Assembly (NCBI RefSeq): GCF_030028105.1
Contig: NC_092395.1
Coordinates: 43,242,459-43,306,458 of the forward strand
Direction: 5' to 3'
Length of the DNA stretch: 64,000 bases
DNA from: Mobula birostris
Taxonomy: Eukaryota
A program made the position numbers and the translations under genes. Below are positions 13,691 to 63,850 of the stretch, in pieces; position 1 is the stretch's first letter; each line of letters begins with the position of its first letter. A model generated the notes under the pieces. It worked only from the letters and a program-made list of their open reading frames with translations, searched no databases and was not told the origin of the DNA.

Positions 13691-14919
13691 CAGTGGAAGG
13701 AAGATTCCTGATGAAGCAGCAGAACATGCTTGGGTTGAATGTAGTCCATGAGCAACTGCTGCAGTGATATCATGGGACTGGGACGTTTGAAGTACAACAA
13801 CCACAAAATTTTACACAGGTGAGATATAATTCCAGTCACTGGTGTGCTTTACTCATGATACCCCATTGATTTCCGTGTTACCAGAAGTTGATGGCATGAT
13901 TGAGGATAACAGAACAGGTATCAATGGGGTTGCTCTGTTGGGAACTTGCATGGACCCAATGGACTGAATGGCCTCATTATGCATTTTAATAAATTGCACC
14001 ATAAGACCACAACACATAGGAGCAGAAACAGGTCATTCAGCTCATCTACTCCGCCATTGCATTATGGCTGATTTATTAGCAGCAGTAGTTCAATGCAATA
14101 CATAAACTAGAAGAGAAAACTAAATAAATAAAATAATAATAATAATAATAAATTAGCAAGTAAATCAATTACAGTATATATCTAACCCTCAGGCTTGGCC
14201 AGCATGTGTCTGTCTTGGGGGAAACAACTTCTGGCTCTGTCAAACTGAGAAATCTCGTTTGTGTGGATGCTACGTGATGTGTTGTCAGGTTACAAATCCG
14301 CACTGCAAAATATGAAACAGTACACAATATGTGATTAAGCAATTGACCTTTGTCATGCTTAATTTGACTCTATGGTTAGTAAAGAAACAAAAAAAACAAA
14401 ATAGGTCCATTCTCATGAAACAGTCTATTGTGCATTATTGGAGGTCACTATTCGTTCATTTGTTCCCATTGACCTCCAAGCATAGCCTGCCTTTGCACCC
14501 ACGCTCATCATTCCACTCTGACCAGCGGTCTTCCGACTGTCGCCATGCAGACCTCTATCTCTCCATCGATCCCCGATGAAAAGACTACGAGAAACCCGGC
14601 TCGCAGACACACAAGAAAGAACAACATTTCTCCCATTGGATTCCAAAGCCCCATTATCTCTTGTCATAACCCAAATATTGCTGTTACAGAGAAACCATTA
14701 CCTCAGCAGTGGAACATTGCATAGAAGCCATGACATTAGCCTTGACAGTGAAACCTTACAGCGCGTTACAAACGTATATTGAATAGATTAAAAAACATGC
14801 AAAAACAGAAATATTAAAAAAGTAAGGTAGTATCCAAGGGTTCAATGTCCATTTAGAAATCGGATGGCAGAGGGAAAAAAGCTGTTCCTGAATCGTTGAC
14901 TGTGTGCCTTCATGCTTCT

Positions 14920-25469: not shown

Positions 25470-25792
25470 TTAACAGCTGGATTGTGTGACTGTTGCGGAT
25501 ATTGTCGAGGCTGCTCCTTGTTGAACTGAGCAGGAGTAGCTCTTCCCACTGCTCCAGTCTGCGCCGGGCACCGTCGGGTAGCTGCTGAGACTGAAGGTTT
25601 TGTCCGCGTTCTGAGTCACCCTGCTGGTTTGCACCTCACTGCTCGTCGGACTGTCGTTCACTGTCCAGCTGACGACAGGGAAGCCCATCGACAATTTACT
25701 GACCAGGCAAACTAAGGTGCCCGATCCTTTAGCGGAGATATTCTCGGCTGATGGCCCAAGCAGTTTCACTGAAGGGTCCGGGAGCTGCTGAG
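25470..25792 (-). CDS. Immunoglobulin light chain C exon (sigma-type)
   Basis: Acceptor TGTTCCAG, then (A)QQLPDPSVKLLGPS...TLVCLVSKLSMGFPVVSWTVN...FSLSSYPTV...YSCSVQQG...TQSSC-stop. It has the C1-set Cys/Trp/Cys residues and the terminal inter-chain Cys. Confidence 0.95.
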
Positions 25793-26675
25793 CTGGAACA
25801 TAAACGAGAGAAAACGTGTTTCAAGTCGCGCCATAACTCTCGTCATTTCACAGTTTGGCAGAATCGCGAGTAGAAGGTTTCAGCTTCATTGAGAGGGGTC
25901 CAGAAATTCGCCGAGAGACAGTGCAGTGCCCATGGAGGACAGTACTTCTTGGTCAACCCGGAAAACTAGAAATCAACTCCAACCGGTGAGGTCGGTTGGC
26001 GAGGAGTCATTCATGGAATCGAGAGACACACTGGCATCAAAGCGCTCCCACCCCCAGAGAAGTTTAAAGTGTCCACTTTCTGGGCCATCAGTGACATGTT
26101 CCTCCTCTTGCCTCCGCCGCACTCACCCATCACTAAAGATCCCGCTGCTGTTGGGAGGTTAAACATCTCACAATCTGCTCTGCCCCAGTGGGCGAGGGCT
26201 CCGATTGCGGGGTCCTGAGCTCCATGTAGCGGGGCGGGGTAGGTCGCTCTCTGATCTGTGATGTCGAGTGATTCGGCTCCCACTCTCCGTGAGGGACGGG
26301 AGGTTGGATTCTCCCCAGAATCGGAGCTCTGGGTTCAGTCGGTGTAGAGACGGGGATCGCCGAACAGTGGTTCCCGGAATGGAGTATCGCTCAAGGGAAT
26401 AGGTGGCAGGAGAGAGGAGGCAAGGACTGGGCAGTGGGAGAGGGTCTGTTATCCGATGGTGAAGGACGAGAGTTCCACCTTCACTGGAAGTCCAGTGAAA
26501 GTCCAAGAGTTGTTTCTTTGGGGAGTTCTAAATAATAAATTGAAACGTGTCATTCTACTGTGTTGACAACCACAGTGGAATGTCCTGACCCCACTGACAC
26601 CTCACATCCCACTGTGTCCCTTCACTGGATCCCTTCACGTTCCTTCCTGTGAAACCACCATAAAAACTGACAAAC

Positions 26676-26867
26676 AACAGGAATTCTGCAGATGCTGGAA
26701 ATTCAAGCAACACACATCAAATTTGCTGGTGAACGCAGCAAGCCAGGCAGCATCTCTAGAAAGAGGTACAGTCGACGTCAGGGTCTCGGCCTGAAACGTC
26801 GACTGTACCTCTTCCTAGAGATGCTGCCTGGCCTGCTGCGTTCACCAGCAACTTTGATGCGTGTTGC
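26676..26867 (+). mobile_element. Fold-back PLE-derived element in J-C intron, 15-bp TSD
   Basis: TSD TAAAAACTGACAAAC at 26661-26675 and 26868-26882. Inverted arms of 73 bp at 26706-26778 and 26796-26868. Retains GAAACGTCGACTG. Confidence 0.9.
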
Positions 26868-27160
26868 TAAAAACTGACAAACTAACACGACAGCAGAAAT
26901 AACACCAATGAACAGAAAGTGTTAAATCATGGTTCGTCCGAAAACACACCGAAAAGAGAAATGTTTCATTAAAAGACGAAAACAATTCACCAAACACAAC
27001 TCCATCGAGTAAAATTGATGCTGGACACGAACGCGATTAGACTGTAAGTCAACATTTCCACTGTAAAGTTAGCTAGGATATTATAATGTAGAAGTTATGC
27101 ATTGCTGGGTGATCGTATTTATCCGGTGGTCATCGCAGGAGGTATTTATCGGACACTTAC

Positions 27161-27197
27161 CTGTAACAAAGAGCTTGGCCCCCGGGCCGAACACCCA
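27161..27197 (-). CDS. IgL J segment
   Basis: WVFGPGAKLFVT plus G, with an FGxG motif, followed by donor GTAAGT. It splices in phase 1 to C, giving ...FVT-A-QQLPDPSV. Confidence 0.95.
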
Positions 27198-27236
27198 CAC
27201 AGTGTGGGATTCCGGGCATCAGCAATTACCCAGGAC
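27198..27236 (-). promoter_or_regulatory. 23-bp-spacer RSS of J with degenerate nonamer
   Basis: The perfect heptamer (plus-strand CACAGTG 27198-27204) abuts J. After 23 nt the nonamer position reads ACCCAGGAC, 4/9 matches to ACAAAAACC. Confidence 0.75.
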
Positions 27237-27547
27237 ACTGCAATCAGGCAGAAAACACGGTCAGACGTTCCCGTTTCAGCATGAAACCAGACTTCACACA
27301 TTCCGACTGTCCCGGTCTGTGAGGGACTGGAGGGGGTGAACTCACAGCCGTATCGCCAGACTGACATTAAACGACATCAAACACTCGACAGTGGGTGACG
27401 GGATTCGGAAACATTCCAAATATGGCAAGAATGGCATTGCAAAAATAGCGTATAATGGGTAAAATTAAAGTAACCTTATGAAGAGTGAATGATGAGAGTG
27501 TTTTCATCCGTTGCAAAGATGTGAAGTGTATCATGTTTGCTGACCCC

Positions 27548-27575
27548 AGTTTTTGTTTTACCCTCTCTCACTGTG
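27548..27575 (-). promoter_or_regulatory. 12-bp-spacer recombination signal sequence of V
   Basis: CACAGTG (27575-27569), 12-nt spacer AGAGAGGGTAAA, nonamer ACAAAAACT (27556-27548). Confidence 0.97.
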
Positions 27576-27902
27576 ACAAGTAGCCACTGCCCGCTGAAAA
27601 CCACTTTCTGCAGTAATAGACGGCAGCGTCATTCATCTCCACGTTTTTTATGATCAACTGGTAAACGGTGCCGGCGCTGTTGGCTGCCGACGTGAAACGG
27701 TCGCTGCTAAACCCAGGCCCGTAGCTTGGACTACTCCAGGAATGATAGTAGTATAGGATCCACTGTGGACCTGTTCCCGGTATCTGTTTGTACCAGCCAA
27801 CACCATAGCTATCCTTTGTTCCGATGTCACAATTCAGCGTGGCCGTGGCTCCCGGTCTCACAGACACGGTCGGAGTCTGAGTCAGAGTTTGGGACTCTCC
27901 AG
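27576..27902 (-). CDS. Immunoglobulin light chain V segment, sigma isotype
   Basis: Open V-set exon GESQTLTQTPTVSVRPGATATLNC...GVGWYKQ...YYYHSWSSPSYGPGFSSDRFTS...DAAVYYCRKW. The canonical C, W and YYC residues are present. The long CDR2 YHSWSSPxYGxGFSS and a 12-RSS are typical of sigma V. Confidence 0.95.
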
Positions 27903-28003
27903 CTGTGAAAGACAGGAATTCAAATTTAACATCGACTTTTCAATCTGACCCTAAGACCCACCTTAGCAATCGTTAGCGGTGCAGACTTGCTGCCTGTACT
28001 TAC

Positions 28004-28057
28004 AGCCCAGCCACATTAACCCAGTTATAGAGCCAATCACACCGGAGAGGATTCCAT
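28004..28057 (-). CDS. IgL sigma leader exon (frameshifted as assembled)
   Basis: ATG at 28057-28055 and donor GTAAGT at 28003. The exon is 54 nt but phase 1 needs 3n+1. The spliced frame reads ...GILSGVIGSITGLMWLG (signal-peptide-like), whereas the ATG frame stops after MESSPV. The 101-nt intron ends at a TTTCACAG acceptor. Confidence 0.8.
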
Positions 28058-28088
28058 GCAAATAAGGGTGACTGACACTGACCAATCA
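28056..28088 (-). promoter_or_regulatory. V promoter: octamer ATTTGCAT plus CCAAT box
   Basis: Exact octamer at 28063-28056 overlapping the ATG, and ACCAATCA at 28081-28088. Confidence 0.75.
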
Positions 28089-28194
28089 GAGCGGGAATCT
28101 GAAACCCTCCCATTCGCCGCTGCACGTCGCCGGGTTAATGCAACGACACCAGCAGCAACTGACTGATCTGTTCAAAACAACTCGCGAATGAAAA

Positions 28195-28428
28195 CAAGAG
28201 GAATTCTGCAGATGCTGGAAATTCAAGCAACACACATCAAAGTTGCTGGTGAACGCAGCAGGCCAGGCAGCATCTCTAGGAAGAGGTACAGTCGACGTTT
28301 CAGGCCGAGACTCTTCGAAGGGTCTCGACGAAGTGTCCTGACGAAGGGTCTCGGCCTGAAACATCGACTATACCTCTTCCTAGAGATGCTGCCTGGCCTG
28401 CTGCATTCACCAGCAACTTTGACGTGTG
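28195..28428 (+). mobile_element. Fold-back PLE-derived element in V promoter region, ~13-bp TSD
   Basis: TSD TCGC(G/A)AATGAAAA at 28182-28194 and 28429-28441. Inverted arms of 91 bp at 28227-28317 and 28342-28432. Confidence 0.88.
28335..28368 (+). ncRNA. Minimal type I hammerhead ribozyme motif (PLE-type)
   Basis: GTC-CTGACGA-AGG-gtctcgg-CCT-GAAAC-ATC-GAC. The CUGANGA and GAAA cores are intact, stem II has 3 bp and stem I is GUC/GAC. Helix III ACAU deviates from the ACGU palindrome seen in sibling copies. Confidence 0.7.
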
Positions 28429-28644
28429 TCGCAAATGAAAAGGTCGTTCATTGTCGGACATTTTCCACTTCTGCCTTCATTTCCCTGATTCCTTCCTTTG
28501 GTCCAGAGATGTCCGTCACACCTCCAGTGACAACAGGGACAAGGACAACAGGACAGTGCAGACTTCCTGTTCCCACAACAGTCTTTCAGCCATGGAGTTC
28601 AAACCCACTCTGACAGTTTGAGGTTCGAAATGTGGGGATTTAGA

Positions 28645-28975
28645 TCAGAATCAGAATCAGGTTTATTATCACCGGCATGTGACCTGAAATTTGTTAACTT
28701 AGCAGCAGCAGCGCAATGCAATACATAATCTAGCAGAGAGAAAAACTAAAATTATAATAAACAAGTAAATCAATTACGTATGTTGAATACATTAAAACAC
28801 GTGCAAAAACAAAAATATTATATGTTAAAAAAGTGAGGTAGTGTCCAAAGATTCAATGTCCATTTAGGAATCGGATGGCAGAGGGGAAGAAACTGGTCCT
28901 GAATCGCTGAGTGTGAGCCTTCAGGCCTCTGTACCTCCTACCTGATGGTAACAGTGAGAAAAGTCCATTTACCGG
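28645..28975 (-). mobile_element. Rex1-like LINE 3' fragment
   Basis: LLPSGRRYRGLKAHTQRFRTSFFPSAIRFLN and a (GATTCT)n tail. A similar split fragment lies at about 14050-14915. Confidence 0.75.
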
Positions 28976-29109
28976 AAAGTATTTACCATGAATGTAAAAA
29001 TTAAAAGCAATTAAACGTGTATTCTTGTAAATATTTTTTTCATTATGAATAAAGTTTATGTTAATATAAAACAAACCTGTACCGCCACAGTATAGCGTTC
29101 TCCCGCTAC

Positions 29110-33749: not shown

Positions 33750-36700
33750 TCTTTTTTCTTTTTCAATATTTTTATTGATTTCTATATAGAAGAATACAGA
33801 GTCCAAGGGAATACATATTATAAAACAAAAGAAAAAATATAATGATACCAGGTACAGTATATAGAATCACATTAATGAACTCCTTACCCTATATTCATAT
33901 AGATTAGAATAATTTGTACATTGGAATATAAACAGTTTTATATAAAAAAATCTATACCCACTACCAAAGTCGAAGCTGTTTTGGGAAAAAAAAAGAAAAA
34001 AAAAACCTTATCAGAGAATAAAATATGCTATGAACCAACTTCTGTACTTTAACGAGAAGTCAAAGATTATGAGAATAATTTAAAAATGGCCCCCACAAAT
34101 TTTGAAAATCTTGGTTAGATTCAGAAATTGAACAACGAATCTTTTCTAAATTTAGGCATGCCATAACATCCCGTAACCACTGAGCATGGTTGGACGGAAC
34201 AGCATCCTTCCACTTAAACAAAAGCGCCCTCCTAGCCATAAGAGAGATAAAAGCCAGAATGTGCAAATCAGATGTCTTCAAGATGATATCTTTCCTTCCA
34301 ACAATACCAAATAGGGCAGTCAAAGGATTAGGCTTAACACTTACTTTAAAAAGTACAGAAAAAGTTTGGAATAATTCCTTCCAATATTTTTCAAGTCTTG
34401 GGCATGTCCAAAGCATATGAATGAATGAAGCTTCTCCATTCTTACACCAATCACATAAGGGAGATGTATTCATATAAAAATAAGATAACATATCCTTGGT
34501 CATATAAGCCTTATGAACCACTTCAAATTGCAGGAGGGAATGACGAACACATAAAGATGAAGTATTAACCAATTTAAAAATTTCATTCCAAGTTTCTTCA
34601 GAAATTGAAGTCTGTAAATCTTGTTCCCAAAGATTTTTGATTTTGTCTAAAGAATTATTTCTCATTCCCAGCAACGTACCATAAATATTGGATATTGAAC
34701 CATTATAAAATGATTTCATTTAAAGAATTTCATCCAGTGCGTTCTTATCAGGATTATTAAGAAATGTATATAATTGAGATTGCAGAAAATCTCTAAATTG
34801 TAAGTACCGAAAAAATGGGTGTTTGGTCAACAATATTTAGTTGACAATTGTTCAAAAGAAAAAAGACTTCCTCCACAAGCAGATCTTGGAAGCGTGTAAT
34901 GCCCAATCCTTCCCATTGTTTAAAAACTACATCAGTCATAGAAGGCTTTAAAGATAATTTTAAAAAAAGGGACTAGAAAGGGAGAACCTCAATAAACCAA
35001 AGTGTTTTCTAAATTGTCTCCAAATCCTCAAAGTATGTTTGACTACCACATTTTCAGTTATCTTACTTAAGAATAAAGGAAGTGAAAATCCCAGAAGAGA
35101 TATAATAGAAAATTTACTAACTGGGTTAGCTTCTAAAGAAACTCATCCAGGACAGTCCTCATGATTAATATAGTGTAACCAAAATGTGAGATTCTGTATA
35201 TTAGCTGCCCAGTAATAAAACCTAAAATTTGGTAAAGCGAAATCTCCATTCTTTTTAACTTTCTGGAGATGGACTTTATTCAATTGAAGATGTTTACTTT
35301 TTCCATATATAGGAGGATAAAATAGAGTCCAGAGGGTCAAGAAAGGATTTAGGAATAAAAACAGGTAAAGCCTGAAAGAGGTATGTAAGTTTAGGTAAAA
35401 CATTCACTTTAATAGAATTAATTTGACCAATCAATGTTAATGAAAGGGGCAACCAATTTGATAATGTTCTTTTTATATAATTTAATAAAGTAAGAAAATT
35501 TTCTTTAAATTGGTATTTATAATTCTTAGTAAATGTTACACCCAAATAAGTGAATTGGTTTCTTAATATTTGAAAAGGAAATTTAATATCAGTTGATACC
35601 AAATTATTCAAAGGAAAAAGTTCACTCTTGTGTAGGTTCAATTTATATCCAGAAAACCAACTAAAATAAGAGAGTAAAGAAAGCACAGAAGGTAATGAAG
35701 TTTCAACATTAGAAATGTAAAGCAGTAAGTCATCCACATAAAGTGAAACTTTGTGGATAGTACCCTTCCGTAAATAACAGTGATATCATTAGGTTCTAAG
35801 GCCAGGTCAAAGAGCAAAGGACTCAAAGGGCAACCTTGTCTGGTTCCACGTTGAAGTTTAAATGGTTTAGTATTCTGAGAATTAGTAAGAACGCGAGCAA
35901 AAGGAGGTTTGTACAGTAATTTAATCCATTGATTAAAGTTGGACCAAAATTCAATAATACCATTCAACCCGATCAAAAGCCTTCTCAGAGTCTAAGGATA
36001 TCACACACTCCAATATCTCCTTAAAAGGAGAATAGATGACATTTAATAACTGAGGAAGTGAGAATATCGATTTTCAATAAAACCAGTCTGATCATCAGAA
36101 ATGATAGATGGTAAGATATTTTCCACCTTACGGGCCAGAACTTTAGAGAGGATTTCGTCATCAACATTAAGTATGGAAATTGGTCTATATGAAGAACATT
36201 CAGTTGGGTTCTTATTTTTTTTTAAGGATAAGCGAAATAGAAGCTTCGTGAAAAAGATTGTGGCAACCTACCTGGCTTACAAGAAACTGAAAAAACTGAA
36301 CATAAATGAAGTAGAAGCAAAGAAGAAAAAACCTTATAAAATTCTCCAGAAAATCAATCAGGACCAGGATCTTTTCCTGAATGCAGTGAGCGTACAGCCT
36401 CGGCTATTTCTTCATGAGAAATACATAGATCCAATTGTTTTCAGTTATCAGCAGTAAGTGTGGGGATATTTAATTGGTCTAAAAAATTATCCATTACAGT
36501 ATTATCTTTAAGAGGATCAGAACTATAAAGTTTAGAATAAAATTCTCTAAAAGTATCATTTATTTCTAAATGATCAGTTATCCTAATACCGTTAGCTTTA
36601 TAAATTTCTTTAATCTGTCATTTAGCACTAGAAGTTTTAATTTGGTTAGCCAATAATTTACCTGTTTTATCTCCATGAATATAAAATTGACTTTTATCCT

Positions 36701-41431: not shown

Positions 41432-42523
41432 CGTTCATCGTGCAAAGGTGCAAAAATAACAGGGTTGTTATCATTGGTGACTTGAACTTCCCTAATATTG
41501 ATTGGCACCTGATTAGTTCTAAGGGTTTAGATGGGGCAGAGTTTGTTAAGTGTGTCCAGGACGGATTTCTGTCACAGTATGTGGACAGGCCTACTAGGGA
41601 GAATGCCATACTAGATCTAGTACTAGGTAATGAATCGGGTCAGGTCACAGATCTCTCAGTGGGTGAGCATCTGGGGGACAGTGACCCCCGCTCCCTGGCC
41701 TTAAGCATTATCATGGAAAAGGATAGAATCAGAGAGGACAGGAACATTTTTAATTGGGGAAAGGCAAATTATGAGGCTATAAGGCTAGAACTTGCAGGTG
41801 TGAATTGGGATGATGTTTTTGCTGGGAAATGTACTATGGACATGTGGTCGATGTTTAGAGATCTCTTGCGGGATGTTAGGGATAAATTTGTCCCGGTGAG
41901 GAAGATAAAGAATGGTAGGGTGAAGGAACCATTGGTGACAAGTGAGGTGGAAAATCTAGTCAAGTGGAAGAAGGCAACATACATGAGGTTTAGGAAGCAA
42001 GGATCAGATGGGTCTATTGAGGAATATAGGGAAGCAAGAAAGGAGCTTAAGAAGGGGCTGAGAAGAGCAAGAAGGGGGCAGGAGAAGGCCTTGGCGAGTA
42101 GGGTAAAGGAAAACCCCAAGGCATTTTTCAATTATGTGAAGAAAAACAGGATGACAGGAGTGAAGGTAGGACCGATTAGAGATAAAGGTGGGAAGATGTG
42201 CCTGGAGGCTGTGGAAGTGAGCGAGGTCCTCAATGAATACTTCTCTTCAGTATTCACCAATGAGAGGGAACTTGATGATGGTGAGGACAATATGAATGAG
42301 GTTGATGTTCTGGAGCATGTTGATATTAAGGGAGAGGAGGTGTTGGAGTTGTTAAAATACATTAGGACAGATAAGTCCCCGGGGCCTGACGGAATATTCC
42401 CCAGGCTGCTCCACGAGGCGAGAGAAGAGATTGCTGAGCCTCTGGCTAGGATCTTTATGTCCTCGTTGTCCATGGGAATGGTACTGGAGGATTGGAGGGA
42501 GGCGAATGTTGTCCCCTTGTTCT
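41432..42523 (+). mobile_element. CR1 ORF2 internal fragment (endonuclease C-terminal half to pre-RT), open for 361 aa
   Basis: VIIGDLNFPNIDW, RENAILDLVL, HLGDSD, KSPGPDGIFPRLL and DWREANVVPLF. Confidence 0.93.
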
Positions 42524-42529
42524 GACAGG

Positions 42530-43960
42530 AAATGATCATGTTGAGGTGGTGGAGGTGTGCGTTCATGGGTGTAGGAGTTAGTCATCCTTCGTACTTGGGG
42601 AAATTAACTGTTTTTGAATCTAGTGGTCCTGGTGTGGATGCTACACAGCATCCTCTCAGCTGGGAGTGGGACAGTCAATGTGCAGGGTTGGTGGGATCCT
42701 TCATGACATTACTGACACCATTCTGCATATACGTCCTTGATGGTGGGTCAACTTGTGCCACTGATGCATTGGGCATACCCATGGTATTGAAGTTCCTGTC
42801 CACCACAGAGCAGTTTCCTTACCATGCAATGAGAAAGCTTGTTAGGATGCTCTGTATTGCACATCTGCAGAAGGACATGAGTAAAGCTGTGCACAGTCCA
42901 GCTCACTTCAGCCTCCTCGGAAGTAGAAGTGTAGGTGAGCTTTCCCAGTTGTGTAGGATGTCTTCTGGGATGATGAGAGGTGATGCATGATGTGTGGCCA
43001 ATCTGATGTGTGTGGTGTGAGTTCTCCTGACGTCAATAACAATCTTCCTTGTCTTGCTGATATTGAGGAACAAGTTAATTGCCTGGAACCAGCCATCAAA
43101 CTCTTGCACCTCCTCTCTGAATGCTGTATTATCATTGTTGGTGATGAGCCCCACCACTGTTGTGTCATTGGGAAACCTGACAATGTGATTACTTAATGTA
43201 TGGCTGTGCAGTGATGTGAGAGCAGAGTGTTTAACAATGGCGCCAGCGCAGAGCCCTGGGGGTGGGGGCACCTGTGTTAAGGATCATGGAGAGGGAGGAG
43301 CAGTTATGCATCCTGACTATCTGAGGTCTGTTTGTTCGGAAGTCCAACAACCAGTTGCACGGTGGTGCATTTAGACTGAGGAGTCGGAGTTTGTTCACCA
43401 AGCTCTGTGGGACAATCGTGTTGAATGCTGAACTGCAATCCAGAAACAGCATTCTAACAGTCCTGCTGGAGGGTCTTGGCCTGAAACATCGACTGTACTC
43501 TTTTCGATAGGTGCTGCCTGGCATGCTGAGTTGCTCCAGCATTTTATGTGTGTTGCCTGGATTTCCAGCACCTGCAGATTTTCTATTCTTCTGACACAAG
43601 TGCTCCTGTTTTCTTGGTGTACCAGGGCCAGTTGTATGACAGATGCTATTGCATTCGTCATTCGGTAAACATATTTGTGAGTGTCCAGTGTGGCAGGAAT
43701 GAGCTTTTAATGTGTGCCATTACCAGCTGTTCAAAGCACTTCATGATCATTGGTGTCAGTGACACCGGTCGACAGTCATTTAGTTCTGAGAGTGTAGAGT
43801 ACTTTCATACAGGAATGAAGGTGGCTGATCTGAAGCATATGGGACAGCAGCCTGGATGAGTGAGGTGTTGTAGATGTCCGTGAGGAGGTCAGTGAGCTGG
43901 TGTGCACATTTCCTGACTCCTCAGCCTGGGATGTTGTCTGGCCCAGCTGCGTTAAGGGGT
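42530..43960 (-). mobile_element. Rex1-like LINE RT fragment with PLE-derived insert
   Basis: [37 protein letters not shown] and LNISKTRKIVIDVRR. Confidence 0.85.
43457..43590 (+). mobile_element. Single-arm PLE pLTR-derived element with decayed hammerhead
   Basis: ACAGTC-CTGCTGG-AGG-gtcttgg-CCT-GAAAC-ATC-GACTGT, followed by the same arm as the fold-back elements. Confidence 0.75.
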
Positions 43961-44224
43961 TTGAATCTCTTCAGAATCCTTGTGATTATACAAACATGAA
44001 AGCAATTGTAAGCAAAACCAACACTAGAAAAAGACAATAAAAGCAATAATTTGGGCTCCAATTAACACAGCTCAGTCAGAATCAGAATCAGGTTTATTAT
44101 CACTGACAGATCCAATACACTTCCCTTGTGACTCTCTCTTTGGTAAAATAAAATCATTTAAAATCTAAGGACAATAACATGCAAGGTAGGACATTATTAG
44201 TAGTTTCTCATGAGATAAACTGTG

Positions 44225-44680
44225 GAAAACATTGATGGTAACAAAACAAATGATGGTGACGAGGAGGTGTACAGGAGTGAGATAGATCAGCTGGTTGAAT
44301 TGTATTGAAACAACAACCTTGCACTTAACATCAGTAGGAACAATGAACCGGTTGTGGACTTCAGGAAGGGGAAGTTGAAGGAACACACACCAGTCCTCAT
44401 TGACGGATCAGCATTGGGAAGTGTGTGCAGTTTCATTCAAAAGGCGATGACTCAAACAGACAGTATCCAACATTCAGGTCCCATCATTCAGGACATGCCC
44501 TCTACCTAATGCTGCCATCAAGGAGGAGGTACAGGAGCCTGAAGACACACACCCAATGTTTCAGGAACAGCTTCTTCCCCTCTGCCATCATATTTTTGAA
44601 TGGACAATGAATCCATGAATACTGTGGCAGTATTTTTCCTTCTCTTTTTCACTACTTGTTTAATTTAATCTTAATAATTC
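44225..44680 (+). mobile_element. Rex1-like LINE 3' fragment
   Basis: HSGHALYLMLPSRRRYRSLKTHTQCFRNSFFPSAI. Confidence 0.75.
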
Positions 44681-52460: not shown

Positions 52461-53309
52461 CTTAAAGTGAGGCAAAGGCACTTGTTGATCTAAAGAAGTG
52501 GTGGGGTATTTTTATTGTGTGGCTCATCTGTGTTATTGAATCCACCAGCATTGAATTAGAGTGAGTAAAATGATATCTATTTAGAAAGTATTCTCCAGTC
52601 TGAATTGAACAAGTCCACCTTTCAATCAATAGGAATCGTGGTCTACAGCCAACGTTTGACAATACTATAGTGAACGATTTTGATATCAGGTCTGGTGCAG
52701 ATTTCTGTATTAAATGCAGAGCAGAAGCTTTTGCAGTATCATGTCGGCAGACAAAGTCAAGCAAAGTCTTTCATTCATTTTGGTGGTATTTGTTCTAAAT
52801 GGAGGATTAAAGAATAGAGTTTGTCCTATTATACACGACCAAGACCAAGAACCCCCAGGTGGACAATGATACTCCACAGGATTATATAATAAGTGTGGAT
52901 GTGATGAAGTGGCTGGACCATATTTCACAGGATTGACTCAAACTAGATACAGGTTCCAAAGTGTTCGTAACAAATCTTGACCATTCATTCATTTCCTTAG
53001 ACACTGCCTGACCTGCCGAGTTCCTCCAGCAATTTGTGAGTGTTGCACTGTAGGTGAGCATGTTCTCCTCTGAGATACCTGCTCATTATATCTGGGTGGT
53101 TGATCGAGACCTGTGCCCATTGTCAAGCAAAGTGAGTGAAATGTTTGGCTGGATCCACTACAGAAAGATTTCTGGAGCTCTGGAAGGAAAAGTCTGTCCG
53201 ACACAAGTAAAGAAGTACAGTGCATTGGGACTGGATTGGCAAGCAAGGAGCAAGCTGGAATTAATTGCTGTGACGAGTGGGTTGCCTTGTCCTGAGCAGA
53301 AAAACAAAT

Positions 53310-54820
53310 TATAAAAAAAGCAAGATGTTGGGGGAGTTCAGCAGGTAAGGCAACATCTGTGGAGGGAAATGGACAGTAGACAGTAGTGTGAGGAGGAGCA
53401 GGAGAAGGTGGTGGCGCGACGCAGCTTGTGCGGCCACTCCGGTGAATGATATCTGTAATCTGTCAAATAGTGTGCCGTGCACAATTCTGATTTGATGGAG
53501 ACAGACGTGAGGGAATGGAGGAACATCTGGAGATACTTATGAAATGCCTTTTTCGCTGCCGCTGCTACTGTGTGATCCAGAATCTCAGGAGGGGAAGGCC
53601 CCGAGTCCTCGGCTTTGCTTGCTGCTCGGCGGCCGAGACGGGGTTGAAGCGCTCAGCAGAGATGGTGCTTGGTACTCAGTGTCGAAGGGCTGGTCGGAGG
53701 CTCGAAGTTTTCGGACAGAGTCAGGGTTGGCTGGGATCAGGTGATTCCAATGCATCGACAGTTGTCAGTACCTGGAGGTTTATGGCGGAGAGAGTTTCTT
53801 CCATCTGCCGCCTGCTATCAGGGAGTATCGGGAGTCGATCGGAACTTTGAGACTTTTTTTTACCGTTCCGATGTCCTGTTCTTTATCAAATTATGGTATT
53901 GCTTTGCACTGCTGTAACTATATGTTATAATTATGTAGTCTTATTAGTGTTAGTCTTTGGTTTGTCCTGTTTTTTCTGTGATATCACTCTGGAGGAGCAT
54001 TGTATCATTTCTTAATGCATGCATGCATTTCTAAATGACAATAAATGAGGACTGACAGTACTCATAATCTAAAAAAAAAGACGTATTGAGTTGGGTCCTA
54101 TCATCCAGACTGAATGACAAGAGGGCAGATATCCAGTATAAAATGTTGGAACTAGAGGTGGCAAGTGAGAAATGGATCAATGTGAAGGGTGGGGGGTGAC
54201 ATAGATGGAGAAAGGGAAGGTGGAAATGATGACAAAATTGGAGGTGATAGATGGAGAAAACAAGGGCTGAAGATGATTGAATCTAATAGGACAGGAAGTT
54301 GGGTGATGGAATCAAGTGAGGAAGATGGGGAGGGCAGATGGGAATGGTGAGGGAGGGGAAATGTAGTGGAACAAGTGTATGGGTCATGGGGAGATGTTGT
54401 AGGTAGAGTAAGGGACATAAATTGAGTTTTAGAAGATAGGGAGAGCTTAGAAATAATGGGTAGACCAGGAGAAGAAGAAAAAGGAAGAGAGGAGAAACAG
54501 TTGACTTGAAATTAGAGAATTCATTCTTCTCATGTCATTAGGCTGTAGTCTACCCAGGTGGCATAGAAGGTGATGATCCTCTAATTTGTGTTTAGCTTTG
54601 TCAGGGAAGAGGACAAGACTGAGTACAGACATGTCAGTGTAGGAACAGGCTTGAAAATTAAATGGATAACAACTGGGTGCTCTAGGTAGTCATGGCAGAC
54701 AGAACACAGATGCTCAGCGAAGTGGTCACCCAGTTTGTGCCTTGTCTCACCAATGCAGGAGTGGACGCGTTAGGAAAACCAGATGCAATAATCTAGGCTG
54801 GAGGCTTTGCATGTGATTTT
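53310..54820 (-). mobile_element. Penelope-like element 3' part (GIY-YIG endonuclease plus pLTR), interrupted
   Basis: CIGETRHKLGDHFAEHL and KHKLEDHHLLCHLGRLQPND, a pyrimidine-rich spacer, a decayed hammerhead at about 54080-54113, and the pLTR arm resuming at 53381-53320. Confidence 0.85.
53382..54078 (+). mobile_element. ~700-bp non-autonomous retroelement, copy 3
   Basis: Head GGAGAAGGTGGTGGCGCGACGCAGC, tail GACAATAAA...CTCATAATCT(A)n, apparent TSD AGAC. Confidence 0.8.
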
Positions 54821-61900: not shown

Positions 61901-63850
61901 TTATTGTCATTGTGCTGAGTACAGATACAAAGCCAATGAAATACAGTTAGCATCTAACCAGAAAAGCATAGAATAGTGTTATTCACAAAATAACTGCGAA
62001 TAAAAAGTAAAGTGCTACAGCACACAGATACAAAAGCACTGAGACTGTACAATATGAGTGCAATACTGCTTAACGTTGTGATGTGAGGTTCAGCAGAATC
62101 AAAGCATCAGGGAAGAAGCCCTTCCTGTGCCTGCTGGTGCGGGAATGGAGGCTCCTGTAGTGCCTTCTGGATGGGAGAAGAGTAAAAAGTCCATGGTTAG
62201 GGTGAGATGCATCCTTGATAATGCTTTTCACCCTGCCCAGGCAGCGTTTATGGTAGAGGTTCTCAATGGTGGGCAATTGGGTTCCAATAATCCACGGGGC
62301 AGTTTTCACCACACATTGGTTTGCTTTGCGGTCTGATATGGGACAATTGCCATACCACACTGAGATGCAGTTGGTGAGTATGTTCTCAGTGGTACAGTGG
62401 TAAAAGTCCGTCAGTATACTGGGACAGAGGTGAGCTTTCTTGATACTCCACAGGAAATAAAGGCACTGTTGCGCCTTTTTGATCAAGGTAGAGGAATTCA
62501 AAAACCAGGTGATATCCTCAGAAATGTGGACCCCAAGGAATTTGAAGCTTGATATACGCTCCACTACATCTCTGTTGCTGTAGGTGGCGACGTGAGTGTG
62601 GCTCCTAGAATGCCTGAAGTGCACAATGATCTCCTTGGTCTTCTGGGTGTTAAGTTCCAGGTTGTTGTCGGCACACCACGCGACCAGGTGCTGGACCTCA
62701 TCCCTGTAGGCCAAGGTACCCCATGCAAGGCTTACTGAGAATGTAAGGATGCATGGTGTCCAAGGGGACATTGCTTTTTAAATCCAGAACTGGCTTGCCC
62801 ACAGAAGGCAAAGAGTGGTTGTAGACGGGTCATATCCTGCATGGGGGTTGGTGACCAGTGGTGTGCCTCAGGGATCTGTTCTGGGACCACTACTCTTTTG
62901 ATTTTTGTAAATGATCTGGATGAAGAAGTGGAGGGTTGGGTTAGTAAATTTGCTGATGACACAAAAGTTTGTGGTGCTGTGGATAGTGTGGTGGGCTGAC
63001 AGCGGTTACAGTGGGACATTGATATGATGCAAAACTGGGCTGAGAAGTGGCAGATGGAGTTCAACCAAGATAAGTGTGAGGTGGTTCATTTTGGTAGGTC
63101 AATTATGATGGCAGAATATAGTATTAATGGTAAGACTCTTGGCAGTGTGGAAGGTTAGAGGGAACTTGGGGTCCAAGTCCATAGGACATTCAAAGCTGCT
63201 GCGTAGGTTGACTCTGTGGTTAAGAAAGCATATATTGCATTGGCCTTAATCAAGCCTTCATCAATTGTGGGAATGTGTTTAGGAGCTGAGAGGAAATGTT
63301 GCAGCTGTATAGGACTCTAGTGAGACCCCACTTGGAGTACTGTGCTCAGTTCTGGTTGCCTCACTATAGGAAGGATGTGGAAATCATAGAAAGGGTGCAG
63401 AGGAGATTTACAAGGATGTTGCCTGGATTGGGGAGCATGCCTTATGAGAATAGGTTGAGTGAACTTGGCCTTTTTTCCTTGGTGCGACGGAAGATGAGAG
63501 GTAACCTGATGGAGGAATATAAGATGATGAGAGGCATTGATCGTGTGGATAGATGCTTTTTTGCAGGGCTGGAATGGCGAGCACGAGAAGGCAGAGTCTT
63601 AAGATGTTTGGAAGTAGGTATAGAGGAGATGCCAGGGGTAAGTTTTTTTACGCAGAGTGTGGTGAGTGCATGGAATGGGCTGTTGGCAACGATGGTGGAA
63701 GCGGATATGATAGGGTCTTTTAATAGACTCCTGGACAGGTAGATGTAGCTCATAAAAATTGAGGGCAATGAGCAACCGGAAGTAATTTCTAATGTAAGAA
63801 CATGTTCAGCACAGCTGTGTGGGCCAAAGGGCCTGTATTGTGCTGTAGGT
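58935..63850 (+). mobile_element. Near full-length CR1 (5' UTR, SGNH-esterase ORF1, APE-RT ORF2, 3' tail), split by Rex1
   Basis: ORF1 VCLPGARVQDVSDR...VVHIGTNDIG. ORF2 NYRPVSLTSVVGKLMEKI, DFSKAFDKV, KFADDTK and RPHLEYCAQFW. Frameshifted. Confidence 0.92.
61881..62711 (-). mobile_element. 5'-truncated Rex1-like LINE inserted into CR1 RT
   Basis: Open frame YRDEVQHLVAWCADNNLELNTQKTKEII...FKFLGVHI...LLPSRRHYRS. The tail reads GACAATAAATTTGAATCTAATC. Apparent TSD CAA(A/G)GT. Confidence 0.9.

What the first reader, a model, noticed from the sequence alone, without database searches (positions are those of the whole stretch)
26676..28428. Two hammerhead-bearing fold-back retroelements bracket the Ig L-V-J cassette
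Seen: two nearly identical ~200-230 bp palindromic elements lie in the same orientation, one in the J-C intron and one about 140 bp upstream of the leader ATG. They have different long TSDs (15 bp and about 13 bp), so they are independent insertions. Established: Penelope-like elements carry minimal type I hammerheads in their pseudo-LTRs and often form inverted pLTR arrangements. Inference: this is a non-autonomous, TPRT-mobilised, ribozyme-derived fold-back family, distinct from cut-and-paste MITEs. Two copies within 1.8 kb around a V-J unit suggest a preference for open Ig chromatin. They also create direct repeats that could excise or duplicate L-V-J as a unit.
Basis: partly seen in the sequence, partly recalled or inferred. 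Interest (0 to 1): 0.75.

Follow-up and report, generated by a model that had tools for sequence, protein, structure and literature searches.

The report
Two Penelope retrotransposon stubs beside antibody gene
The two small palindromic insertions around this ray antibody light-chain gene are real, but they are ordinary by-products of a very abundant Penelope-like retrotransposon, only one still holds a full (decayed) hammerhead motif, and nothing links them specially to antibody genes.

Summary
Both elements exist as described: copy A at 26676-26867 lies in the J-C intron with a perfect 15-bp target duplication. Copy B at 28196-28432 lies about 130 bp upstream of the promoter octamer with a 13-bp duplication carrying one mismatch. 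Each is two short copies of one ~100-130-nt unit laid head-to-head. One arm alone carries a 31-nt terminal "tail", and the two copies have different central junctions. This is the published signature of Penelope-like element (PLE) integration: inverted 5'-truncated copies, a tail at one end, a palindrome at the junction, and a minimal hammerhead in the terminal repeat. The fold-back is therefore made at each insertion, not copied from a fold-back master. Only copy B holds a complete hammerhead core, with a G.U closing pair and a broken helix III palindrome. Copy A lacks the CUGANGA box, and Rfam finds no hammerhead. Tens of thousands of contigs in each of three ray organisms match the unit. 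The window holds 3-5 insertions in 64 kb, so two within 1.5 kb is unremarkable (P 0.14-0.39). A second organism appears to share both insertions. There is no support for Ig targeting or repeat-mediated excision. The scan has noted this same family many times elsewhere in this genome.

The parts
26661..26675 (.). Copy A target-site duplication, left copy (15 bp)
   Evidence: Perfect repeat of 26868-26882 (D7).
26676..26706 (-). Copy A 31-nt PLE tail, the 3' end of the tail-bearing arm (sense on the minus strand)
   Evidence: Present on one arm only. The same tail is seen in copy B and in the solo unit.
26707..26779 (-). Copy A tail-bearing arm body, 5'-truncated near the hammerhead cut site; it holds no hammerhead core
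   Evidence: Alignment of arms in sense orientation; nhmmer hit 26779-26677.
26780..26867 (+). Copy A tail-less arm. It starts inside the hammerhead: helix II, GAAAC and GUC are present (26780-26800), but the CUGANGA box is absent
   Evidence: The descriptor scan finds no full motif here.
26868..26882 (.). Copy A target-site duplication, right copy
   Evidence: D7.
28182..28194 (.). Copy B target-site duplication, left copy (13 bp, one mismatch)
   Evidence: Compared with 28429-28441.
28196..28226 (-). Copy B 31-nt PLE tail
28227..28314 (-). Copy B tail-bearing arm body; its CUGA box is destroyed
   Evidence: (I2).
28306..28334 (.). Copy B inverted junction: a 22-nt near-palindrome (28306-28327) followed by a short extra fragment that repeats part of the hammerhead
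   Evidence: Read directly. Palindromes at inverted PLE junctions are published (PMC3846280).
28335..28432 (+). Copy B tail-less arm, starting at the family's recurrent 5' boundary. It holds the minimal hammerhead motif at 28335-28368, with the predicted cut after 28365
   Evidence: This is the only min-HHR descriptor hit in the 64-kb window. Hundreds of contigs per run have loose ends at 28335.
28429..28441 (.). Copy B target-site duplication, right copy; it overlaps the last 4 bases assigned to the arm
43455..43587 (+). Solo (single-arm) unit of the same family with its tail. It shows that the basic unit is hammerhead, then body, then tail
   Evidence: nhmmer E 1.8e-35.
25470..28063 (-). Ig light-chain cluster that the two insertions bracket: C exon 25470-25769, J about 27160-27197, V 27576-27867 with RSS, octamer 28056-28063
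   Evidence: V-set Pfam hit E 9e-17; C-domain ORF; RSS and octamer read.

Best explanation
Each element is the product of one integration event by the machinery of a Penelope-like retrotransposon. The endonuclease makes staggered cuts about 13-15 bp apart in an A-rich target. Both freed DNA ends prime reverse transcription on the 3'-terminal region of PLE RNA. One priming starts at the outer start site, so that arm carries the 31-nt tail. The other starts at the inner site, so that arm has no tail. Both cDNAs stay very short, reaching at most the minimal hammerhead, and they are joined head-to-head. The result is a 190-240-bp fold-back flanked by a target duplication. The elements carry no coding capacity and are inert passengers near the Ig gene. 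Shown here: the anatomy, the target duplications, the one-sided tail, the differing junctions, and the abundance of the family. Inferred from published PLE work: priming on both strands and the two start sites. Unresolved: whether the template was full-length PLE RNA that was copied only briefly, or a short unit-length RNA copied in trans.
For: Both copies and the solo unit carry the tail on one arm only. Aligned in sense orientation, the arms are the same unit (nhmmer E 1e-31 to 1e-42). The inner junctions differ: in A the arms stop at the cut site and inside the hammerhead, while B has a 22-nt palindromic junction plus a full-length second arm. No substitution is shared by same-side arms of A and B. 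Other genomic copies join variably truncated tail arms (28214-28272) to 28335 (table 5). The target duplications are 15 and 13 bp. A min-HHR motif occurs at the start of the unit and is the only such hit in the window, against 0.01-0.2 expected by chance. The published PLE signature matches. Craig 2021 describes an inverted 5'-truncated copy and a 30-40-bp tail at one end (PMC8557442). Arkhipova 2013 describes a 31-bp tail on one of the inverted pLTRs, palindromes at the inverted junction, and solo pLTRs (PMC3846280). The 2024 Mobile DNA paper on the anole PLE shows cleavage and extension of both strands, with the tail lying between two RT start sites (PMC11167929). Cervera and de la Pena 2014 describe min-HHRs in pLTRs and dual motifs on opposite strands (PMC4209133).
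Against: No PLE reverse transcriptase or GIY-YIG ORF lies in the window, so I did not show the link to a coding PLE myself; it rests on anatomy plus unchecked scan notes. Rfam finds no hammerhead. The very sharp recurrent 5' boundary at 28335 is not what random 5' truncation predicts. It fits a short template RNA with a defined 5' end better.
Confidence: 0.8

Rival explanations
1. This is a self-propagating, non-autonomous fold-back family. A palindromic master RNA carrying hammerheads is copied as a whole by TPRT.
For: The two copies are similar overall, both have long target duplications, and scan notes list many fold-backs elsewhere in this genome.
Against: The junctions differ between A and B. 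Contigs from other copies show many different truncation points joined to 28335. There are no arm-specific shared substitutions. Solo units exist. A transcript of the whole fold-back would form a hairpin of -141 to -194 kcal/mol that buries the hammerhead.
Confidence: 0.07
2. The ~128-nt unit (hammerhead, body, tail) is itself a true non-autonomous element. It would be transcribed from its own start at the upstream edge of the hammerhead, or processed there, and copied in trans by PLE enzymes. The fold-back would still arise at insertion.
For: A sharp boundary at 28335 appears in 208-387 contigs per DNA run in three organisms, with near-random sequence beyond it (agreement 0.40-0.44, table 7). 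Internal RT initiation makes the downstream sequence irrelevant (PMC11167929). pLTRs can hold promoter motifs, and solo pLTRs can move cargo in trans (PMC3846280). A 2026 preprint derives animal retrozymes from PLE pLTRs.
Against: Contigs cannot show RNA ends or copy numbers. No promoter has been shown. The boundary could equally be a strong stop for the reverse transcriptase at the structured hammerhead.
Confidence: 0.3
3. The insertions reflect targeting of open Ig chromatin, or have a role at the Ig cluster, for example recombination between the direct repeats that removes or duplicates L-V-J.
For: Two copies lie 1.5 kb apart in the same orientation around V-J. The cluster type is transcribed and rearranged in an RNA-type run (joint 27196 to 27580).
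Against: With 3-5 insertions in 64 kb, a gap of 1520 bp or less has probability 0.14-0.39. The family fills tens of thousands of contigs in each of three organisms, and scan notes place it in titin and receptor introns. The longest identical direct run between A and B is 43 bp, against 77 bp in inverted orientation, so inversion would be at least as likely. No in-register joint skipping 1520 or 1565 bp appears among those listed, although most joints were not shown.
Confidence: 0.04
4. The elements are MITEs moved by a DNA transposase.
For: They are small, palindromic and flanked by target duplications.
Against: The two ends are not inverted copies of each other, because of the one-sided 31-nt tail. 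The target duplications are long and of unequal length. Single-arm copies exist.
Confidence: 0.02

Closest known systems
Penelope-like element insertions with inverted pLTRs and a one-sided tail (Arkhipova 2013, PMC3846280; Craig 2021, PMC8557442; the 2024 Mobile DNA paper on the anole PLE, PMC11167929)
   Same: Head-to-head inverted copies, heavy 5' truncation, a 31-nt tail on one arm only, a palindrome at the inverted junction, a flanking target duplication, and a hammerhead motif in the terminal repeat.
   Different: These copies are extreme stubs of about 90-125 nt per arm with no ORF. The target duplications (13-15 bp) are longer than the 8-10 bp reported for rotifer PLEs. The link to a coding PLE was not shown in this window.
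Minimal hammerhead ribozymes of metazoan PLEs (Cervera and de la Pena 2014, PMC4209133)
   Same: A CUGANGA box, one unpaired base before helix II, GAAA, and no helix III loop, with the palindromic ACGU expected to pair in a dimer. The helix I is short. Dual motifs on opposite strands 100-700 bp apart are reported.
   Different: Helix II is only about 4 bp and closes with G.U instead of the conserved G10.1-C11.1. Copy B reads ACAU instead of ACGU. Copy A lacks the first core box. Cleavage was not tested.
Non-LTR retrozymes of animals (Cervera and de la Pena 2020, PMC7229834; 2026 preprint 10.64898/2026.07.22.740005)
   Same: Short non-coding units with a type I hammerhead that are related to PLE pLTRs, with dispersed monomers.
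   Different: Retrozymes are head-to-tail tandem repeats that yield circular RNAs. These two are inverted pairs with their own target duplications and no tandem array at this locus.
L1 twin-priming inversions
   Same: Both DNA ends at a staggered break prime reverse transcription, giving an inverted 5' part within one target duplication.
   Different: In L1 the two parts copy different regions of the RNA. Here both arms copy the same 3' region, which gives a palindrome.

Membership tests
Penelope-like element (insertion product) | Belongs to an element that encodes a PLE reverse transcriptase with a GIY-YIG endonuclease | not testable with these tools
   No such ORF lies in the window (Pfam on 16 ORFs of 130 aa or more). 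The rest of the genome is not readable, and two metagenome scans found nothing. Scan note s1-145165 reports GIY-YIG arms in the same genome but is unchecked.
Penelope-like element (insertion product) | A 30-40-bp tail extension at only one end of the insertion | tested here: met
   A 31-nt tail sits on one arm of A (26676-26706), on one arm of B (28196-28226) and on the solo unit. It is absent from the other arms.
Penelope-like element (insertion product) | An adjacent inverted 5'-truncated copy, head-to-head, often with a palindrome at the junction | tested here: met
   (I2, I3). The 22-nt near-palindrome is at 28306-28327.
Penelope-like element (insertion product) | Target-site duplication flanking the whole composite insertion | tested here: met
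   15 bp perfect for A; 13 bp with one mismatch for B.
Penelope-like element (insertion product) | Hammerhead motif in the terminal repeat | tested here: met
   A min-HHR descriptor hit at 28338-28365 (+) is the only one in 64 kb, against 0.01-0.2 expected by chance. Partial motifs lie at the same unit position in the other arms.
Active type I hammerhead ribozyme | All core boxes present: CUGANGA, GAAA and UH at the cut site | tested here: inconclusive
   Met in one of four arms (B right). Absent in both arms of A and broken in B left.
Active type I hammerhead ribozyme | G10.1-C11.1 closing pair of helix II | tested here: not met
   All arms and the solo unit read GGG...CCU, which gives G.U.
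Active type I hammerhead ribozyme | Helix III, or for min-HHRs a self-complementary 15.1-16.1 stretch for dimer pairing | tested here: not met
   B right, the only arm with all core boxes, reads ACAU, which is not self-complementary. ACGU survives only in arms that lack an intact CUGANGA box: A right and B left.
Active type I hammerhead ribozyme | Match to the Rfam hammerhead models | tested here: not met
   No hit at the gathering score in the window, and none at E up to 10 in 26500-28600. Only generic miRNA-hairpin matches below threshold appear. Rfam models expect a helix III, so this result is weak evidence.
Active type I hammerhead ribozyme | Self-cleavage | not testable with these tools
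   All runs were held as contigs, which cannot show RNA ends.
MITE (DNA transposon derivative) | Terminal inverted repeats at both ends and a short target duplication of fixed length | tested here: not met
   The left end (tail) and the right end (arm body) are unrelated. The duplications are 15 and 13 bp.
Non-LTR retrozyme | Head-to-tail tandem repeats, each carrying a hammerhead | tested here: not met
   There is no tandem arrangement at either copy. Some contigs elsewhere show tail-to-unit tandem joints (table 5c).
tRNA-derived SINE | A tRNA-like head | tested here: not met
   ARAGORN finds nothing in 26400-28700.

The most novel reading that the evidence does not exclude
The ~128-nt unit (minimal hammerhead, 67-nt body, 31-nt tail) may be a genuine SINE-like parasite of Penelope elements, with a defined RNA 5' end at the upstream edge of the hammerhead. 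It would be copied in trans from an internal start site, and it appears to have reached about 10^4 to 10^5 copies (a rough depth-based figure) in several ray species. The fold-backs would then be its usual double-primed insertion form.
Probability: 0.3. Interest if true: 0.45.

Novelty: new member of a known kind. Interest (0 to 1): 0.15.

Why it matters
Very little for Ig biology. The two insertions are old, inert passengers, and none places a hammerhead core on the Ig transcript strand. The value is in annotation. These short palindromes can be mistaken for MITEs, miRNA precursors (Rfam gives sub-threshold miRNA matches) or ribozyme genes, but they should be masked as Penelope stubs. The family as a whole is a large natural record of how PLE integration primes on both strands, uses two start sites and stops at the hammerhead. 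It could be mined genome-wide to study that mechanism.

Tried and rejected
Rfam at gathering score over the whole window, and at E up to 10 over 26500-28600, gave no hammerhead, only sub-threshold miRNA-hairpin matches caused by the palindrome. Two metagenome pattern scans for the hammerhead and body sequence, meant to fetch a full-length PLE, found nothing. Pfam on 16 of the 23 ORFs of 130 aa or more (plus the V segment) found LINE remnants but no GIY-YIG or PLE RT. All sequencing runs were held as Logan contigs, so three things could not be measured: copy number from depth, RNA ends at the predicted cut site, and rare deletion alleles. The depth ratio between element and flank (about 10^4 to 10^5) is only an order-of-magnitude hint. 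A tRNA-like head was sought and not found. The paper on Penelope endonuclease (PMC522041) is not held. No protein search, structure prediction or complex prediction was needed.

Full report
WHAT IS THERE. The region holds two related elements in the same orientation. Copy A is 26676-26867 (192 bp) and copy B is 28196-28432 (237 bp). Their left parts are 96% identical over 107 nt and their right parts 92% over 91 nt. Each folds on itself. The arms are 73 nt at 95% complementarity in A and 91 nt at 93% in B. Predicted RNA hairpins have energies of -141 to -194 kcal/mol on either strand. Copy A is flanked by a perfect 15-bp direct repeat, 26661-26675 and 26868-26882. Copy B is flanked by a 13-bp repeat with one mismatch, 28182-28194 and 28429-28441. 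In B the last four bases assigned to the arm overlap the repeat, so a 9-bp reading is also possible. In A the first T of the repeat could belong to the element, which would give 14 bp.

THE SURROUNDINGS. The minus strand carries an unrearranged Ig light-chain cluster. The C exon is 25470-25769. J lies at about 27160-27197, with its heptamer and a splice donor. V is 27576-27867 (Pfam V-set, E 9e-17), also with its heptamer. The octamer is at 28056-28063. No second V lies in the window.

ANATOMY OF THE UNIT. The elements are not symmetric palindromes. At the left end only, each has a 31-nt segment with no partner on the other arm. A third, single-arm relative at 43455-43587 shows the basic unit in sense orientation: hammerhead-like motif, then a 67-nt body, then the 31-nt tail. 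Aligned in that orientation, all four arms and the solo copy are the same unit (nhmmer E 1e-31 to 1e-42). In A and B the tail-bearing arm is sense on the minus strand, and the tail-less arm is sense on the plus strand, joined head-to-head.

THE JUNCTIONS. The inner junctions differ between the copies. In A the tail-bearing arm stops at the predicted hammerhead cut site, and the other arm starts inside the hammerhead. In B the tail-bearing arm runs into the hammerhead. It is followed by a 22-nt near-palindrome (28306-28327) and a short extra fragment. Then comes a full tail-less arm starting at 28335. No substitution is shared by same-side arms of A and B.

THE HAMMERHEAD. I scanned both strands of the window with a descriptor for the minimal hammerhead of Cervera and de la Pena 2014 (PMC4209133). 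It found one hit in 64 kb, at 28338-28365 on the plus strand, against 0.01-0.2 expected in shuffles. The motif is therefore real and sits at the start of the unit. It is decayed or atypical in several ways:
- Helix II has about 4 bp and closes with G.U in every arm, instead of the conserved G10.1-C11.1.
- The arm with all core boxes reads ACAU where the dimer model needs the self-complementary ACGU.
- The other arm of B has lost CUGA.
- Copy A has no CUGANGA box on either strand.
Rfam reports no hammerhead, only sub-threshold miRNA-precursor matches produced by the hairpin. On the Ig transcript strand (minus), copy A has no hammerhead core, and copy B lies upstream of the promoter.

WHAT IT IS. 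The anatomy matches the published signature of Penelope-like element insertions point by point:
- Heavy 5' truncation, an inverted 5'-truncated copy adjacent to the main copy, and a 30-40-bp tail at only one end (PMC8557442).
- A "characteristic 31-bp" tail on one of the inverted pLTRs, palindromes at the inverted junction, solo pLTRs, and target duplications (PMC3846280).
- Minimal hammerheads in pLTRs, sometimes as dual motifs on opposite strands (PMC4209133).
- In vitro, a PLE protein that cleaves and extends both DNA strands and starts reverse transcription at two adjacent internal sites, with the tail being the sequence between them (PMC11167929).
The simplest mechanism is one integration event per element, in which both ends of a staggered break prime on the 3' region of PLE RNA. 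One priming starts at the outer site and gives the arm with a tail. The other starts at the inner site and gives the arm without one. The two short cDNAs are then joined head-to-head. The steps shown here are the structures themselves; the priming model is inferred from those papers.

ABUNDANCE AND AGE. All runs that hold the region are kept as contigs, so neither depth-based copy number nor RNA ends can be measured. Even so, 71,366, 137,306 and 41,895 contigs from DNA-type runs of three organisms were laid on the 3.6-kb stretch. A large share fell on the two elements; the rest fell mainly on an unrelated, equally deep repeat at 28546-29000. Summed depth over the elements was 10^4 to 10^5 times that of the unique flanks. 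The tool warns that this ratio is not a copy number, so I use it only as an order of magnitude.

Hundreds of contigs per run end their match at 28335, with near-random sequence beyond it. Many contigs join variably truncated tail arms (28214-28272) to 28335 (tables 5 and 7). This shows two things: fold-backs elsewhere have many different junctions, and the unit has a recurrent 5' boundary at the upstream edge of the hammerhead.

Contigs of a second organism, about 97-99% identical in the flanks, run from the flank into the last 25 and 27 bases of copies A and B (records 30 and 32). This suggests that both insertions predate the split of the two organisms. These overlaps fall under the tool's 31-letter rule for bridging, so the point is suggestive, not proven. 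The arms within a copy differ by 5.5-6.6%, which fits insertions that are not recent.

IG-SPECIFIC CLAIMS. The window holds three clear insertions of the family, plus one or two older relatives at 52984-53046 and 53322-53379. With 3, 4 or 5 random insertions in 64 kb, the probability that some pair lies within 1520 bp is 0.14, 0.26 or 0.39. Same orientation is a coin toss. The longest identical run between A and B is 43 bp in direct orientation and 77 bp in inverted orientation. That is a poor substrate for homologous recombination, and inversion would be at least as likely as deletion. No in-register joint appears among the listed joints, though most joints were not shown. I therefore find no support for Ig targeting or for excision of L-V-J.

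EARLIER SCAN NOTES. The scan has noted this family many times in other windows of the same genome, which the notes describe as a manta-like ray. Examples are in titin introns and receptor introns, and follow-up agents read them as Penelope stubs. These are unchecked AI notes. They agree with what I found here, but I do not count them as evidence.

WHAT STAYS OPEN. I could not show in this window that the unit is the 3' end of a coding PLE. The sharp 5' boundary at 28335 is not explained by random truncation. It could mean a short template RNA with a defined start, which would make the unit a true non-autonomous element. It could instead mean a strong stop for the reverse transcriptase at the hammerhead. 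I rate the first at about 0.3.

VERDICT. It is wrong about a separate fold-back family, and it has no support on Ig biology. This is a new member of a known kind, of low interest.

Noticed in passing
window 27196-27580 (minus-strand Ig gene): An RNA-type run of the source organism holds a contig that joins J at 27196 to V at 27580 with one extra C. V is trimmed by 4 bases and J by 1, so this is a V-J rearranged transcript. The C, J and V exon bins are covered and the J-C intron is not. The leader bin 27941-28061 has zero coverage, so the transcripts may come from a close paralogue.
   Followed up: partly
window 28004-28063: The octamer on the minus strand overlaps an ATG whose frame hits a stop after 6 codons. 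The open leader-like frame has no ATG. This agrees with scan note s1-146376 and suggests this cluster's leader may be defective.
   Followed up: partly
window 52984-53046 (+) and 53322-53379 (-): Two older, diverged fragments of a related PLE-unit subfamily lie in inverted orientation about 275 bp apart (nhmmer E 6.6e-7 and 0.007). They may be one old inverted insertion with a spacer.
   Followed up: partly
window 28546-29000: A different and very abundant repeat starts at about 28644, right after copy B. Its summed contig depth is 10^5 to 10^6 in three organisms. It has relatives at 14076-14919 and 44076-44613.
   Followed up: no
window 28369 onward, seen in contigs from elsewhere in the genome: About 190-240 contigs per run diverge after GAAAC into a shared different body sequence (agreement 0.62-0.64). 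This points to a second abundant subfamily that shares the hammerhead but has another helix I and body (table 7).
   Followed up: no
window 34060-35737 (-) and 41440-42990 (+): LINE remnants: Exo_endo_phos_2, RVT_1 and zf-RVT domains. An ORF at 62070-62771 (-) matches ALKBH8_N (E 2.4e-11).
   Followed up: no
window 25792-26592: The source organism's contigs include second versions of the J-C intron at about 90% identity with similar depth (records 3 and 5). These are either a paralogous cluster or a very divergent haplotype.
   Followed up: no
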